A stretch of 43,497 nucleotides of DNA, taken from NCBI GenBank assembly GCA_002269645.1, contig NIVC01001772.1, positions 168,846 through 212,342 of the forward strand, given 5' to 3'. Each line of letters begins with the position of its first letter. The first letter of the stretch is position 1. The notes under the pieces are model-generated. The model was given only the letters and a program-made list of their open reading frames with translations, was not told where the DNA came from and did not search any database. Shown piece after piece: positions 1,718 to 41,944 of the stretch. The position numbers and the translations under genes are program-made. Source of the DNA: Macrostomum lignano (lineage: Eukaryota).

Positions 1718-3948
1718 TCAAAGTGCCGTATTAAACGCATCGGCAGCGTAGAGGTCAACCAGCTGATACCCACCCCCATTGCTAGCATCTAAATCAATTA
1801 GGGACGAAGGTTCTACTAACGAGTGCTGATCAACAGGTGCGATAGCGTCAATACTAGTTGTTAAACCGGCATCGTCAGTTTGCTGCAAATCTTGTTGTTG
1901 TTGTTGTTGTTGTTGTCGTTGTTGTTGTTGTTGTTGTAGTTGTTGTAGTTGTAGTCTCCGCAGTGTATCTTGCCCAAATGCGTCAGTGTCGGATTCCGAG
2001 ACCTGCCTCAGATATGGATCTCTGCGGGATTGTGGTTTTATCGGTGAAGATAATAATTTTTTGAGGATATCTGAAAAATCAATTACTCGTAGTTTTGCGT
2101 TTATCATTTTAGGTATCAAGTTGTAAAGCGCTGCATTATGGATCCAGTCGAAAGGTAACAAAAAACAAACTACTCTAAATAGCGGTTAGTTTCGCTTCTA
2201 GTGTAGCAACAGTAGAATGAAAAATGTGCTTAAAAGTGCTTGGTAAAGTAGCGATATCATAATGATGCAATAGATACAGCGTGTGATTAAATAATTAAAA
2301 AAACAGGGGTGCTCAAGCAGTTATCGAAAGTGAGAAAGAAAACTTAATAGTATGCAATGCTATGGTAGATGGCAGATTCTAGATTTCTAGGCGGTGAAAT
2401 TGGCCTTTCGCTTTAAAAAAATTTTTGACTGTATCTGACAGTCTGAAGATCTAAGTTGTCGTTTGTGTCGAAGGTGCAAACCTGACATCTCCCAGGTTGT
2501 TGGAGCCCCGCTGCCAGACGAAAACTGGTCTGGGACTGCGGATGGTGGCAGGTTATGACGGCGGTGGCGGTTGGAACCACCATCGTGCGGTCGGATTGGC
2601 GGCAGCCTGACACCGCCTCGGAGCACCGAGCTATCATCGTCAAGGGAGGTTACGAGCAGCACGAGCAGGCACGCGAGTGAGTTATTTGACTAAATGCTAC
2701 GTTTCAATTAGTGAATATTGTGAGCAGGTGAACATCGTTAAATTAAAAAATATATATTCTTTCCTGCAAGCTGACCTCTTTATATCAATTTCAACACTGG
2801 CAAAAATTACATCCTTGCTCAAATTTTTTGGACTTTAACGTCTAAATTCCAAAATTTTGAGCACTTTAAACACCCTGGCCTTGTGTGGCCACCCGCTTAT
2901 TCTATTCGGATGCAACTGAGATCTTGTAAAGCTCCTAAAATCCTCACGAGAGGTGCATGGAGTTGCTGTTTTTCTGTAGGGAAAGCCATGGACCCAAGCC
3001 GACAATCCAATTTTTTTGGTTAGAACTAAGCGAAGCTACAAATATTTAACGTTAAATCTGTTATAGTTGTTGTTAGCTTTATAAATCGAAAAATCCAGTT
3101 AGTTAGGCGTTAAACTATGGCGTTACCTTCCACTATTATTGCTGATTGACTAATGGTTCCACAGACTCAGTGGGACTGCTTTGCTCTTCCCTGCGTGATA
3201 TTTTGTTTCATATAACTATTTTTGAGTGAAATCAGTTGTTTGAGTTTAATAAACAGCATCGACAACACAGTAATTTAAAGGAAAATAGGCTCGGCTCGTT
3301 CACACCGCCATCAAAGAAGACCAAATTTCGTGTGATCACATGACTTGTACATCAACCTTCATTCCTTGTACGTCAGTCGCGTGATTTTATGGCAGTGTGA
3401 ATGAGCCTTTAGAGCTTAAATCAGTGGTGAATCAGTTTCATGCACATGTAAAGTTTTTTTTGAGCAATAACACCAAATAAATAATTGAAAATCTATTTAT
3501 AGGAAGCCTTCAGTGAAATAAAAAAGTGGTTCACTCATACACACACCTAAACATTCAACACTTCAAAGCAGTTACCATTTTATTTATTATTTATATGAGG
3601 AACCTTCGAGTAATCTTTTACCTATTCAAGCTGCATACCAAACAACCACTTAAAGTGTTAGTCACAAGTTTATGTATTGCATCTCTACAAACCATAGGAA
3701 GCCTATTGCAATACATTACAGAGTAAATACCAAAATCCTAACACCATATGCAATATGTAACATGCATAAGAATGAATTCATACATTGATGATGATTATGT
3801 TTAAAAGTACACTTACACTTCGTCAGCCGGAGGATCATCACTCGCTGGACCCGATCCCGGCCGGTTTGTGGCTGCGGCTAGCCAAGCGTCCTCGTGGTCA
3901 GTGCTGTCAGCATTGTTAACCACGATGATCGGGTTGCCATCCTCGTCT
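1718..3948 (-). CDS. Cytoplasmic-tail exons 3817-3948, 2482-2630 and 1718-2070 (poly-Q, ends ...AFNTAL*)
   Basis: Phases chain 2-2-1 from the TM exon: A|[12 protein letters not shown]...PPADEV|[15 protein letters not shown]...WEMS|[12 protein letters not shown]...QQQ...NTAL*. These are GC-rich islands in AT-rich DNA. The acceptor at 2631 is weak, and the 3817 exon could instead end at GTG TAA. Confidence 0.65.

Positions 3949-41944: not shown

What the first reader, a model, noticed from the sequence alone, without database searches (positions are those of the whole stretch)
1718..41944. ~6,000-aa, ~50-EC cadherin with tip-link/intermicrovillar-link (CDH23/PCDH15/CDHR2-like) architecture
Seen: the ~52 traced exons sum to ~18.1 kb of CDS. 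The ectodomain is EC repeats only (~5,500 aa), then a non-EC membrane-adjacent segment, a TM helix and a tail ending NTAL. No EGF/LamG or catenin-binding segment is visible. Established: Fat has 34 EC plus EGF/LamG, Dachsous and CDH23 have 27 EC, and PCDH15 has 11 EC plus a MAD domain. Inference: this is a much longer member of the link-forming cadherin group. At ~4.5 nm per EC it would span over 200 nm, consistent with a long surface tether on cilia, microvilli or adhesive cells.
Basis: partly seen in the sequence, partly recalled or inferred. Interest (0 to 1): 0.7.

Follow-up and report, generated by a model that had tools for sequence, protein, structure and literature searches.

The report
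Giant 52-repeat protocadherin-15-like flatworm cadherin
The window holds one very large minus-strand gene, most likely from the flatworm Macrostomum lignano, for a roughly 6,000-residue cell-surface cadherin built like the hearing "tip-link" protein protocadherin-15. It has about 52 repeats instead of 11, partly because a 10-repeat block was copied twice very recently.

Summary
My gene model on the minus strand has 54 exons and 53 GT-AG introns. It encodes 5,863 aa without a stop, plus 2-3 unresolved tail exons. The parts, in order:
- 52 back-to-back cadherin (EC) repeats
- a membrane-adjacent domain (MAD)
- one transmembrane helix
- an acidic tail

Pfam finds only cadherin domains: no EGF, LamG, catenin-binding or 7TM domain.

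The link-cadherin reading passed independent tests. The MAD model's nine best PDB matches are exclusively CDH23 MAD28 and PCDH15 MAD12. By sequence, MAD plus TM hits only PCDH15, and EC1 carries the PCDH15-type cysteine pair.

It is not unprecedented. Collinear relatives exist, including a 6,148-aa, 53-EC scallop protein. These form a group separate from true 11-EC PCDH15 orthologues.

Caveats:
- Thirty ECs come from three copies of a 10-EC unit, with 97-99% identical tracts.
- One copy has a 1-nt frameshift and a decayed exon, so the open frame needs an implausible 38-nt intron.
- The NTAL end is plausible (it matches PCDH15-CD2) but unverified.

Verdict: a new member of a known kind; interest 0.4.

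The parts
1718..42885 (-). Whole gene: start codon at 42885; the 3' end is uncertain (stop at 1861 or 1718)
   Evidence: Exon-chain model and EC tiling. There is one signal peptide and one TM helix.
42832..42885 (-). Exon 1: ATG plus signal peptide MARLTLLTACLIASFIAS, GTGAGT donor
41583..41933 (-). Exon 2: divergent EC1 (aa 19-124, with the conserved pair C19/C104 plus C63 and C86) and the start of EC2
41395..41490 (-). Exon 3 (EC2)
41047..41343 (-). Exon 4 (EC2/EC3)
40390..40492 (-). Exon 5 (EC3)
39945..40063 (-). Exon 6 (EC3)
37394..37570 (-). Exon 7 (EC3/EC4; holds the family motif [11 protein letters not shown])
35913..36041 (-). Exon 8 (EC4)
33037..33198 (-). Exon 9 (EC4/EC5)
32020..32361 (-). 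Exon 10 (EC5/EC6)
   Evidence: The search's extra exon at 32464-32631 was rejected as tandem repeat.
31702..31793 (-). Exon 11 (EC6)
31543..31627 (-). Exon 12 (EC6)
30987..31439 (-). Exon 13 (EC6-EC8)
30322..30825 (-). Exon 14 (EC8/EC9; an alternative donor lies at 30301)
29697..29807 (-). Exon 15 (EC9/EC10)
28753..29164 (-). Exon 16 (EC10/EC11)
28428..28666 (-). Exon 17 (EC11/EC12)
26857..28276 (-). Exon 18: long exon of unit C, upstream of the frameshift (EC12-EC16)
26819..26856 (-). Ad hoc 38-nt GT-AG 'intron' needed to bypass the frameshift; probably not a real intron
   Evidence: It is the shortest of the 53 introns; the next is 51 nt and the median is 103 nt.
26881..26881 (-). Site of a 1-nt deletion in copy C relative to A (14889) and B; it shifts the frame inside the exon and is not in a homopolymer run
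26622..26818 (-). Exon 19: rest of unit C's long exon, downstream of the frameshift (EC17 start)
26299..26553 (-). Exon 20 (unit C)
26066..26206 (-). Exon 21 (unit C)
25847..25993 (-). Exon 22: truncated exon of unit C (147 nt against 327 nt in A and B); EC19 is broken
25775..25893 (-). Decayed 119-nt patch that replaces 273 nt of units A and B through many small deletions
25178..25712 (-). Exon 23 (unit C)
24958..25070 (-). Exon 24 (unit C)
24665..24883 (-). Exon 25 (unit C)
24472..24570 (-). Exon 26 (unit C)
23448..23567 (-). Exon 27 (last exon of unit C)
22006..23361 (-). Exon 28: long exon of unit B (EC23-EC27 start)
21682..21936 (-). Exon 29 (unit B)
21465..21605 (-). Exon 30 (unit B)
21066..21392 (-). 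Exon 31 (unit B)
20425..20959 (-). Exon 32 (unit B)
20218..20330 (-). Exon 33 (unit B; diverged from A and C)
19906..20130 (-). Exon 34 (unit B; diverged)
18220..18318 (-). Exon 35 (unit B)
18013..18132 (-). Exon 36 (last exon of unit B); the next intron (15985-18012) carries a transposon
14629..15984 (-). Exon 37: long exon of unit A (EC33-EC37 start)
14305..14559 (-). Exon 38 (unit A)
14072..14212 (-). Exon 39 (unit A)
13673..13999 (-). Exon 40 (unit A)
13031..13565 (-). Exon 41 (unit A)
12810..12922 (-). Exon 42 (unit A)
12517..12735 (-). Exon 43 (unit A)
12341..12439 (-). Exon 44 (unit A)
11807..11926 (-). Exon 45 (last exon of unit A)
10542..11708 (-). Exon 46 (EC43-EC46; an alternative donor at 10650 would shorten EC46)
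10209..10460 (-). Exon 47 (EC46/EC47)
10010..10132 (-). Exon 48 (EC47)
8877..9405 (-). Exon 49 (EC47-EC49)
7908..8788 (-). Exon 50 (EC49-EC52 start; polybasic GRRRRQA at 8055-8075)
5758..6782 (-). Exon 51: end of EC52, the MAD, the TM helix and the proximal cytoplasmic tail; GTAAGT donor
6261..6578 (-). Membrane-adjacent domain (aa 5489-5594), ferredoxin-like fold
6132..6221 (-). Transmembrane helix (aa 5608-5637), followed by SKRIKRRWR
4848..4955 (-). Exon 52 (cytoplasmic tail; ab initio only)
4605..4670 (-). Exon 53 (cytoplasmic tail; ab initio only)
3817..3948 (-). Exon 54 (tail): motif [11 protein letters not shown]...[11 protein letters not shown], conserved in M. lignano A0A1I8FLM7
   Evidence: tblastn gives 61% identity over 41 aa, E 5.5e-10.
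2487..2630 (-). Candidate exon 55 (uncertain)
1861..2002 (-). Candidate terminal exon A (poly-Asn frame, stop at 1861); best ab initio score, but the score is inflated by an AAC repeat
1718..2070 (-).
   Evidence: Its codon score is -17 and it cannot join exon 54 in frame directly. Unverified.
23448..28276 (-). 10-EC unit C (EC13-22), with two lesions
18013..23361 (-). 10-EC unit B (EC23-32)
11807..15984 (-). 10-EC unit A (EC33-42)

Best explanation
WHAT IT IS
This is one protein-coding gene, most likely from Macrostomum lignano. It encodes a type I membrane cadherin of about 6,000 aa. From the N-terminus the parts are:
- a signal peptide
- 52 tandem EC repeats, 38 of whose 51 linkers keep the canonical DxNDN-type calcium-binding motif
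- a ferredoxin-like membrane-adjacent domain (MAD) directly before a single TM helix
- an acidic cytoplasmic tail, probably ending in a class I PDZ ligand

WHERE IT BELONGS
It belongs to a bilaterian group of giant MAD-bearing cadherins. Their closest characterised relative is protocadherin-15. Members share the EC1 cysteine pair, MAD12-plus-TM sequence similarity and collinear EC2-5. The group is distinct from the 11-EC PCDH15/Cad99C orthologues.

HOW IT GREW
About 32 ECs grew to 52 through two very recent tandem duplications of a 10-EC, roughly 4.3-4.9 kb unit. This step is shown. Gene-conversion-like tracts keep parts of the three copies 97-99% identical. One copy carries lesions that are either real decay or assembly error.

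HOW IT LIKELY WORKS (inferred from PCDH15 and CDH23, not shown here)
- Calcium-stiffened EC chains pair in parallel through the MAD and form a filament of up to about 230 nm.
- The EC1-2 tip binds a partner cadherin in trans.
- The PDZ-binding tail anchors the filament to an actin-associated scaffold.
- The filament would link or tension microvilli, stereovilli or cilia.
For: GENE MODEL
- 54 phase-compatible exons, 53 of 53 introns GT-AG, no in-frame stop.
- 51 EC profile hits tile with gaps of 0-10 aa.
- Signal peptide exon.

DOMAIN CONTENT
- Pfam finds 46 cadherin stretches and no EGF, LamG, Cadherin_C or 7TM domain.

MAD
- The top nine Foldseek matches are only CDH23 MAD28 and PCDH15 MAD12 entries.
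- phmmer of MAD plus TM hits only PCDH15 in the PDB, at 4.6e-5.
- The family profile scores 2.7e-29 against PCDH15 and 1.2e-17 against CDH23.

RELATIVES
- An exhaustive HMMER search finds 18 relatives of MAD plus TM.
- They include proteins of 3,277-6,148 aa from scallops, abalone, brachiopod, nemertean and amphioxus. These carry 25-53 ECs and end in S/T-x-L/F.
- EC2-5 is collinear at 33-41% identity.
- The EC1 cysteine pair aligns with PCDH15 orthologues.
- The N-terminus of the amphioxus giant aligns EC1 in register only with PCDH15 structures.

DUPLICATED UNITS ARE REAL AND CONSTRAINED
- Between A and B, exon divergence is 0.93% and intron divergence 4.0%.
- All 23 indel positions are intronic, and 14 of the 24 exonic substitutions fall at third codon positions.
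- The tract boundaries are mosaic.

TAIL AND SPECIES
- The exon 54 motif is conserved with an M. lignano protein.
- The intronic transposon is 99.7% identical to a copy in assembly GCA_002269645.1. The literature ties that accession to M. lignano Mlig_3_7.
Against: - There is no transcript evidence, and the splice sites are ab initio.
- Copy C has a frameshift and a decayed exon. The single open frame needs a 38-nt intron that is out of range for this gene. The real product may lack unit C, or the gene may be partly degenerate.
- The C-terminus is unresolved.
- The MAD-only tree that separates the giants from the PCDH15 orthologues has weak bootstrap support, 34-49%.
- CDH23 and PCDH15 score about equally against the family MAD profile when the TM is excluded.
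- The window protein's own EC1 does not hit PCDH15 EC1 by phmmer.
- M. lignano is a neopolyploid that is hard to assemble (titles and abstracts).
- Function and partner are pure inference.
Confidence: 0.75

Rival explanations
1. The gene is real, but the count of 52 ECs and about 6,000 aa is inflated. Unit C, or two of the three units, would be an assembly artefact of a neopolyploid genome or a decaying, non-expressed copy. The functional protein would then have about 32-42 ECs.
For: - The tracts are 97-99% identical across exons and introns.
- Copy C has a 1-nt exonic deletion and a 273-nt to 119-nt patch riddled with small deletions.
- The only way to keep the frame is a 38-nt intron, an outlier among the 53 introns.
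- Relatives without recent internal repeats have 25-31 ECs.
- M. lignano is a neopolyploid described as challenging to assemble.
Against: - A and B differ in the way constrained paralogues differ: exon divergence 0.93% against intron divergence 4.0%, indels only in introns, and a third-position excess.
- The units have diverged, non-identical ends (EC13 against EC23/33; EC31 against EC21/41). These ends join in frame, which false haplotype duplication would not produce.
- The Pecten relative expanded to 53 ECs independently.
Confidence: 0.25
2. It is the flatworm orthologue of cadherin-23 rather than a PCDH15-related lineage. CDH23 also has many ECs, a MAD next to the TM and a PDZ-binding end.
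For: - Relatives have 25-31 ECs and 3.3-4.0 thousand aa, like CDH23 with its 27 ECs.
- CDH23 MAD28 is the top Foldseek match.
- CDH23 MAD28 scores 67 bits against the family MAD profile, equal to the MAD-only PCDH15 constructs.
- NCBI names the Tubulanus member cadherin-23-like.
Against: - Single-sequence searches of MAD plus TM, and of EC52 plus MAD, hit PCDH15 co-linearly. CDH23's EC25-MAD28 entry 8tri does not appear; the CDH23 chains that are listed align to the EC part only.
- EC1 carries the two cysteines that align with PCDH15 orthologues. From memory, CDH23 EC1 lacks them.
- CDH23 EC1-2 structures align with the amphioxus giant only from the EC1/EC2 linker onward, whereas PCDH15 aligns from EC1.
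- In the MAD distance matrix, mouse CDH23 is the most distant sequence from the window protein, at 0.91.
Confidence: 0.12
3. It is a Fat- or Dachsous-type planar-polarity cadherin. Several relatives are automatically named 'protocadherin Fat 4-like'.
For: - NCBI's automatic names for the mollusc, brachiopod and amphioxus relatives.
- Generic EC similarity to Fat4, Dachsous and CELSR fragments at 30-40% identity.
- A Pfam Cadherin_FAT4_N model hit that overlaps ordinary ECs.
Against: - There is no EGF or LamG domain between the MAD and the TM. In FAT and CELSR cadherins the MAD precedes such domains (10.1101/460097).
- MAD plus TM matches PCDH15 by sequence.
- The EC-only hits show no family preference.
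Confidence: 0.03
4. The locus is two or more adjacent cadherin genes that were fused by the exon tracing.
For: - There are long introns of 1.1-2.7 kb, and a transposon sits in one of them.
- The literature reports misfused or wrongly split cadherin gene models in other genomes (PMC10734073).
Against: - There is only one signal peptide, at the 5' end, and one TM helix, at the 3' end.
- Every junction is phase-compatible, and the ECs tile continuously across all the long introns.
- Relatives of the same length exist as single predicted proteins.
Confidence: 0.05

Closest known systems
Protocadherin-15 (PCDH15; fly Cad99C), the lower tip-link and microvillar cadherin
   Same: - EC-only ectodomain, with a ferredoxin-like MAD directly before a single TM.
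- MAD plus TM is similar by sequence: 4.6e-5 for the window protein and 2.7e-29 for the family profile.
- EC1 has the conserved N-terminal and F-strand cysteine pair.
- The EC2-EC3 linker is of the D-x-D-D-L-x-P-x-F type.
- The candidate C-terminus NTAL is identical to the PCDH15-CD2 PDZ-binding end (PMC5102745).
   Different: - It has 52 ECs, not 11.
- It falls in a separate group from the 11-EC PCDH15 orthologues. Amphioxus has one protein of each kind.
- The window's EC1 is too diverged for phmmer to detect PCDH15 EC1.
- Cytoplasmic similarity to PCDH15 was not assessed.
Cadherin-23 (CDH23), the upper tip-link cadherin
   Same: - A long EC chain (27 ECs) followed by MAD28 and the TM.
- The best structural superposition of the MAD, at RMSD 2.4-2.6 A.
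- The family profile hits MAD28 at 1.2e-17.
   Different: - The window's MAD gives no single-sequence hit to MAD28.
- CDH23's EC1 did not align in the N-terminal searches.
- It has 52 ECs against 27.
Uncharacterised giant invertebrate cadherins, for example Pecten maximus XP_033754776 (6,148 aa), Tubulanus XP_074649083 (3,989 aa), Lingula XP_013401572 (3,690 aa) and Branchiostoma XP_078576868 (3,277 aa)
   Same: - Collinear N-terminal EC2-5 at 33-41% identity, with the KAYQxDKPxxR motif.
- Collinear C-terminal ECs, MAD and TM at 24-32% identity.
- C-termini of the S/T-x-L/F type.
- EC-only ectodomains of 25-53 ECs.
- The Pecten protein also has internal unit repeats.
   Different: - All are only computer-predicted, are misnamed Fat4-like or cadherin-23-like, and have no known function.
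- The window gene's internal copies are far younger: 99-100% protein identity against 70-88% in Pecten.
- Best identity in the MAD region is 51%, to a 624-aa M. lignano fragment (A0A1I8FLM7). That fragment is a paralogue, not this gene.
Nematostella vectensis CDH23-like hair-bundle cadherin
   Same: - It is a cadherin of at least 6,074 residues reported in the mechanosensory hair bundles of a non-vertebrate.
- Its C-terminal peptide ends ETTL (PMC3899209).
   Different: - I could not obtain its sequence, so its relationship to this family is untested.
- The authors place its C-terminal domain outside the cell, which differs from the topology inferred here.
PCDH24/CDHR2 with CDHR5, the intermicrovillar links
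   Same: An EC chain with a predicted MAD10 directly before the TM, and a role in linking microvilli (10.1101/460097; PMC8691648).
   Different: - It has 9 ECs.
- CDHR2 EC1-2 (5cyx) gave only low-ranking generic EC hits.
- No specific similarity was detected.

Membership tests
Cadherin superfamily | Tandem EC repeats with calcium-binding linker motifs | tested here: met
   Pfam finds 46 PF00028 stretches. My EC profile finds 51 hits that tile. 38 of 51 linkers are of the DxNDN type.
MAD-bearing link cadherins (PCDH15/CDH23/PCDH24 type) | Ferredoxin-like membrane-adjacent domain between the last EC and the TM | tested here: met
   AF2 models. The top nine Foldseek matches are all MAD28 or MAD12 entries. 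Pfam PCDH15_12th scores 21.8 bits, below the cut-off of 27.
MAD-bearing link cadherins (PCDH15/CDH23/PCDH24 type) | No EGF, LamG, GAIN or 7TM domain between the MAD and the membrane; single-pass TM | tested here: met
   Pfam on the whole model. There is one hydrophobic helix at aa 5608-5637, which AF2 models as helix 141-179.
MAD-bearing link cadherins (PCDH15/CDH23/PCDH24 type) | C-terminal class I PDZ-binding motif | tested here: inconclusive
   An ORF ending in NTAL exists, and relatives end in S/T-x-L/F. The terminal exon is not established.
MAD-bearing link cadherins (PCDH15/CDH23/PCDH24 type) | Trans binding through the EC1-2 tip and cis dimerisation, forming extracellular links | not testable with these tools
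   This needs binding assays or microscopy.
Protocadherin-15 proper (PCDH15/Cad99C orthologues) | Eleven EC repeats | tested here: not met
   The protein has 52 ECs. Bona fide orthologues in the hit list have 11.
Protocadherin-15 proper (PCDH15/Cad99C orthologues) | EC1 cysteine pair (N-terminus to F strand) | tested here: met
   Both cysteine columns are conserved wherever the residue is present, across the giants and two PCDH15 orthologues (one orthologue was trimmed before its N-terminal cysteine). That the two cysteines form a disulfide is inferred from PCDH15 structures, recalled from memory.
Protocadherin-15 proper (PCDH15/Cad99C orthologues) | Groups with PCDH15 orthologues to the exclusion of other cadherins | tested here: not met
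   - A neighbour-joining tree on 115 MAD columns puts it with the giants, not with mouse, amphioxus or hemichordate PCDH15, though support is weak at 34-49%.
- N-terminal identity is 33-41% to the giants and 24% to Glandiceps PCDH15.
- Amphioxus has both kinds of protein.
Cadherin-23 | 27 ECs plus MAD28, and a CDH23-type EC1 | tested here: not met
   - It has 52 ECs.
- The MAD fold matches, but 8tri gives no sequence hit.
- CDH23's EC1 does not align with the window protein or with its amphioxus relative.
Fat cadherins | EGF and LamG domains after the EC/MAD region | tested here: not met
   None is found in Pfam. EC tiling leaves no room for missed exons.
Dachsous | 27 ECs with a Dachsous-type cytoplasmic domain | not tested
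The similarity of MAD plus TM to PCDH15 argues against it indirectly.
Classical cadherins | Cytoplasmic catenin-binding domain (PF01049) | tested here: not met
   There is no Cadherin_C hit in the tail.

The most novel reading that the evidence does not exclude
The giant MAD cadherins may form a third, unrecognised bilaterian branch of the PCDH15/CDH23 link-cadherin group that vertebrates lost. Known members would be this gene, the scallop, abalone, brachiopod, nemertean, annelid and amphioxus proteins, and perhaps arthropod Cad89D-like proteins. In this branch, link length would be evolutionarily tunable. EC number changes quickly through tandem duplication of multi-EC exon blocks plus gene conversion. 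It ranges from about 9 ECs in Owenia to 25-31 in most members, and it rose independently to 52-53 in Macrostomum and Pecten. The Macrostomum gene would be caught in the act, with copies about 99% identical.
Probability: 0.4. Interest if true: 0.55.

Novelty: new member of a known kind. Interest (0 to 1): 0.4.

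Why it matters
- Tip-link-type cadherins set the length and mechanics of the extracellular filaments that join microvilli, stereocilia and cilia.
- If the model is right, this is a PCDH15-like protein with 52 repeats, in a flatworm that can be manipulated by RNAi and transgenesis.
- Its 10-repeat block has only just been triplicated. That offers a natural test of how repeat number relates to link length and function.
- The finding also shows that a whole group of giant invertebrate cadherins is mislabelled as 'Fat4-like' or 'cadherin-23-like' in public databases. 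Their ends are in fact PCDH15-like.
- The gene appears to be missing from public protein sets: neither search returned a near-identical protein.
- In itself it is an extension of a known architecture, not a new mechanism.

Tried and rejected
1. The first ab initio chains contained exons that I rejected, because they break EC tiling or lie in tandem repeats or the transposon. These were 32464-32631, 17069-17125, 16769-16880, 16339-16642, 34953-34989, and the 6-nt micro-exons at 40271-40276 and 9874-9879.
2. The first chain also skipped the real 113-nt exons at 12810-12922 and 24958-25070. I recovered them by reading the sequence and comparing with unit B.
3. A word-indexed homologue search with an EC exon returned only generic cadherins at 30-40% identity, with no family signal.
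4. The same tool found nothing with MAD, TM and tail, and only two short fragments with the family alignment. The exhaustive HMMER search was what found the family.
5. Exact-product look-ups for two exon ORFs found nothing, so there was no independent assembly to check the unit count.
6. My search's best terminal exon (poly-Asn, stop at 1861) is not trusted, because an AAC microsatellite inflates its score.
7. The N-terminal family profile against the PDB was uninformative on total score, since every multi-EC chain scores highly. Only co-linearity was useful.
8. The paper on CDH23/PCDH15 evolution (10.1101/2022.01.23.477425) contained none of the invertebrate terms I searched for.
9. The window has no tRNA genes.

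Full report
**What is in the window.**
Stop-free stretches carrying cadherin linker motifs lie almost entirely on the minus strand between about 5.7 and 42 kb. Reading a few junctions showed short GT-AG introns of 60-100 nt.

I wrote an exon-chain dynamic programme with codon log-odds trained on the longest open segments, splice-site weight matrices and phase compatibility. I iterated it. I then curated the result against an EC-repeat profile built from the gene itself.

The curated model has these properties:
- 54 exons, 17,591 nt and 5,863 aa, with no in-frame stop
- all 53 introns GT-AG, with a median length of 103 nt
- 51 profile hits that follow each other with gaps of 0-10 aa

This tiling is independent evidence that nearly all junctions are right and that no exon is missing from the long introns. 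With the divergent first domain there are 52 EC repeats. Of the 51 linkers, 38 have a DxNDN-type motif.

**The two ends.**
Upstream, 42885-42832 reads ATG-MARLTLLTACLIASFIAS followed by GTGAGT. It splices in phase 0 to the acceptor at 41933, which gives a typical signal peptide followed by Cys. Relatives also have a Cys a few residues after their signal peptide.

At the 3' side, exon 51 (5758-6782) carries, in order:
- the end of EC52
- a non-EC segment of about 105 aa
- the hydrophobic helix [30 protein letters not shown], followed by SKRIKRRWR
- about 125 aa of cytoplasmic tail, ending at a GTAAGT donor

Three further tail exons are predicted. The third (3817-3948; [11 protein letters not shown]...[11 protein letters not shown]) is conserved with a Macrostomum lignano protein at 61% over 41 aa, E 5.5e-10.

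Beyond that the model is ambiguous:
- The best-scoring end (stop at 1861) is inflated by an AAC repeat.
It cannot join exon 54 directly in frame.
- NTAL is exactly the type I PDZ-binding end of PCDH15-CD2 (PMC5102745). Most full-length relatives end in S/T-x-L/F.

So the NTAL end is plausible but not shown.

**Domain content.**
Pfam on the whole model gives 24 + 22 significant PF00028 stretches and overlapping cadherin-like models. It gives no EGF, LamG, Cadherin_C, GPS or 7TM domain. The only non-EC hint is a sub-threshold PF23206 'PCDH15_12th' match in the membrane-adjacent segment.

**The membrane-adjacent domain.**
By sequence:
- phmmer of MAD plus TM against all PDB sequences gave only PCDH15 as a significant hit (6c14 at 4.6e-5, 6c13 at 1.4e-4). 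The alignment runs through the second half of MAD12, the linker and the TM helix.
- With EC52 included, the PCDH15 EC9/10-MAD12 entries aligned over the whole query, residues 3-203. Every other cadherin chain aligned to the EC part only.

By structure:
- A single-sequence AF2 model had low confidence in the EC. [quoted passage not shown]
- A second model, built with an 18-sequence family alignment, reached a mean pLDDT of 88.4 and added a long TM helix.
- In both Foldseek searches of the PDB the first nine matches were exclusively mouse CDH23 EC25-MAD28 (8tri) and PCDH15 EC9/10/11-MAD12 (6eet, 6bxz, 6c10, 6c14, 6c13). For the second model, eight of the nine chains gave RMSD 2.2-3.3 A over 110-122 columns. 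Nup54, the known ferredoxin-like look-alike, came next.

De-la-Torre et al. (bioRxiv 10.1101/460097) describe this MAD. They place it directly before the TM in PCDH15, CDH23 and PCDH24, but before EGF or LamG modules in FAT and CELSR cadherins. The arrangement here is therefore the link-cadherin one.

**Relatives.**
The word-indexed searches were uninformative. The exhaustive HMMER search with the end of EC52, the MAD and the TM found 18 relatives.

Group 1, the giants. These have 25-53 ECs by my profile, apart from the three shorter members marked below:
- Pecten maximus XP_033754776 (6,148 aa, 53 ECs)
- Tubulanus (3,989 aa)
- Argopecten (3,606 aa)
- Haliotis (3,554 aa)
- Mizuhopecten (3,545 aa)
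- Lingula (3,345-4,157 aa)
- Branchiostoma (3,277 aa)
- shorter: Owenia (1,161 aa)
- shorter: two arthropod proteins, Penaeus 'cadherin-89D-like' and one from Darwinula

Group 2, 11-EC proteins named PCDH15 or Cad99C: Branchiostoma, Glandiceps, Strongylocentrotus and Tenebrio.

Evidence that the window protein belongs with the giants:
- Its N-terminal 450 aa and C-terminal 600 aa align co-linearly with the giants' ends, at 32-38% and 24-32% identity. Identity to Glandiceps PCDH15 is 24%.
- An EC2-5 alignment shows shared motifs, including KAYQxDKPxxR and DxNDNxPVM.
- A neighbour-joining tree on 115 MAD columns, with mouse PCDH15 and CDH23 added from the printed PDB alignments, groups the window with the lophotrochozoan giants. 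It keeps them apart from the PCDH15 group and from CDH23, but bootstrap support is weak at 34-49%.

Evidence that the giants are closer to PCDH15 than to CDH23:
- The family MAD-plus-TM profile hits PCDH15 at 2.7e-29 and CDH23 MAD28 at 1.2e-17. MAD-only PCDH15 constructs score about the same as CDH23.
- EC1 shows two cysteine columns shared by the giants and the PCDH15 orthologues.
- The amphioxus giant's N-terminus aligns EC1-EC2 in register with PCDH15 EC1-2/3 structures. CDH23 EC1-2 aligns only from the EC1/EC2 linker onward.

I conclude that the giants are a lineage related to PCDH15 but distinct from its orthologues. They are neither Fat nor Dachsous, despite their database names. Amphioxus has one protein of each kind.

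**Precedent.**
A cadherin of about 6,000 aa is not new.
- The Pecten prediction has 53 ECs.
- The Nematostella CDH23-like hair-bundle protein has at least 6,074 residues (PMC3899209).

The window's own product, however, seems absent from the 5.8-billion-protein collection. No near-identical hit came back. The nearest is a 624-aa M. lignano fragment, 51% identical in the MAD.

**Internal duplication.**
Self-comparison shows near-identical tracts:

| Tract in A | Counterpart | Identity |
|---|---|---|
| 15963-13029 | B 23340-20423 | 98.0% |
| 15506-13901 | C 27498-25894 | 98.9% |
| 13627-12523 | C 25774-24671 | 98.6% |

In the protein these tracts lie within three consecutive 10-EC units, each of 9-10 exons:
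- unit C, EC13-22
- unit B, EC23-32
- unit A, EC33-42

The units are not simple clones:
- The 5' part of C (EC13) and the 3' part of B (EC31) are clearly diverged from their counterparts.
- The tract boundaries are sharp, as gene conversion or staggered duplication would leave them.

Between A and B the differences look like constrained paralogues:
- exon divergence is 0.93% and intron divergence 4.0%
- all 23 indel positions are intronic
- 14 of the 24 exonic substitutions fall at third codon positions

That pattern does not fit random assembly error or a duplicated haplotype.

Without the two extra units the protein would have 32 ECs, within the range of its relatives. The Pecten giant has its own older internal repeats (70-88% identity, about 608 aa apart), whereas Tubulanus and Argopecten have none. 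Expansion by unit duplication is therefore recurrent in this group.

**The weak point: unit C.**
Unit C has two lesions:
- a single-base deletion at 26881 inside the long exon (ACTACT-CTTCGAC against ACTACTTCTTCGAC in A), not in a homopolymer run
- a stretch at 25775-25893 where 273 nt of A and B are reduced to 119 nt by more than fifteen small deletions

My model keeps the frame only with a 38-nt GT-AG 'intron'. That is the shortest of all 53, the next being 51 nt. It also needs a shortened 147-nt exon, which leaves EC16 and EC19 truncated.

These lesions are either real decay of the youngest copy or local errors in a long-read assembly of a neopolyploid genome. I cannot tell which without reads.

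**Source organism.**
The 2,028-nt intron between units B and A holds a 1.75-kb Tc1/mariner-like element at 16074-17823:
- 355-aa ORF on the plus strand, with weak Pfam DDE_3 and HTH_Tnp_IS630 hits
- 26-nt terminal inverted repeats

Its exact protein, and 99.7% identical DNA, occur on contig NIVC01000269.1 of GCA_002269645.1 in a different genomic context. Papers tie that accession to the Mlig_3_7 assembly of Macrostomum lignano. Together with the closest protein hit, this makes M. lignano the likely source.

**How it probably works.**
Shown here:
- a secreted N-terminus
- an EC-only ectodomain of about 5,470 aa with mostly canonical calcium linkers
- 184 N-glycosylation sequons
- a MAD, one TM helix, and a tail with a conserved acidic motif

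Inferred from PCDH15 and CDH23:
- parallel dimerisation through the MAD
- a trans bond at the EC1-2 tip with a partner cadherin
- anchoring through a PDZ scaffold
- an extended length of up to about 52 x 4.5 nm, roughly 230 nm; the 13 non-canonical linkers could bend or soften the chain

A role as a link or tether between microvilli, stereovilli or cilia is the most economical guess, but it is untested.

**Verdict.**
- It is a new member of an existing but uncharacterised group, not a new kind of protein.
- Its most interesting feature is the very recent triplication of a 10-EC unit.

Noticed in passing
window 16074-17823 (ORF 16298-17365, + strand; TIRs 16077-16102 and 17795-17820): A Tc1/mariner-like DNA transposon sits inside the 2,028-nt intron between exons 36 and 37, on the opposite strand. 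It has a 355-aa transposase (weak DDE_3 and HTH_Tnp_IS630 hits) and 26-nt inverted ends. A 99.7% identical copy lies elsewhere in the M. lignano Mlig_3_7 assembly (NIVC01000269.1), so the element was probably active recently.
   Followed up: yes
window 6823-7869; 33253-33922; 34142-34523; 35323-35872; 36149-36616; 37612-38328; 38805-39886; 40583-40968; 42157-42788: Nearly every intron longer than about 500 nt holds a tandem array. Examples are a 14-mer x75, GTCT x167, a 9-mer x80 and a 16-mer x68. The 9-mer array (37612-38328) matches the 16-mer array (38805-39886) in inverted orientation at about 85-88% identity. Several arrays are open in two or three frames and mimic exons (SDSSDS..., DRQTDRQT...).
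   Followed up: partly
window 8055-8075 (aa 5365-5371, in EC51): The polybasic GRRRRQA lies in a loop about 25 residues before the EC51-EC52 linker. It resembles TGRRKRRQA at a similar distance before the DINDN linker in the S. purpuratus PCDH15-like protein XP_030835040. It may be a conserved furin-type cleavage site near the membrane-proximal end.
   Followed up: no
P0127 (Pecten maximus XP_033754776), aa ~500-2800: The 6,148-aa scallop relative has its own internal repeats at 70-88% identity, about 608 aa apart. Its congeners' proteins have 29-31 ECs and, in the one checked (Argopecten), no recent repeats. The scallop expansion to 53 ECs is therefore independent.
   Followed up: partly
window 246-506 and ORF 109-480 (- strand): A 132-bp direct repeat (two copies, 99% identical) lies downstream of the gene. 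The overlapping 123-aa ORF has no Pfam match.
   Followed up: partly
P0121 (M. lignano A0A1I8FLM7, 624 aa): M. lignano has a second protein with the same MAD and tail motifs ([19 protein letters not shown]...[11 protein letters not shown]), but it is only about 31-51% identical. This points to an older paralogue of the gene in the same species. The database model looks fragmentary and partly out of frame.
   Followed up: partly
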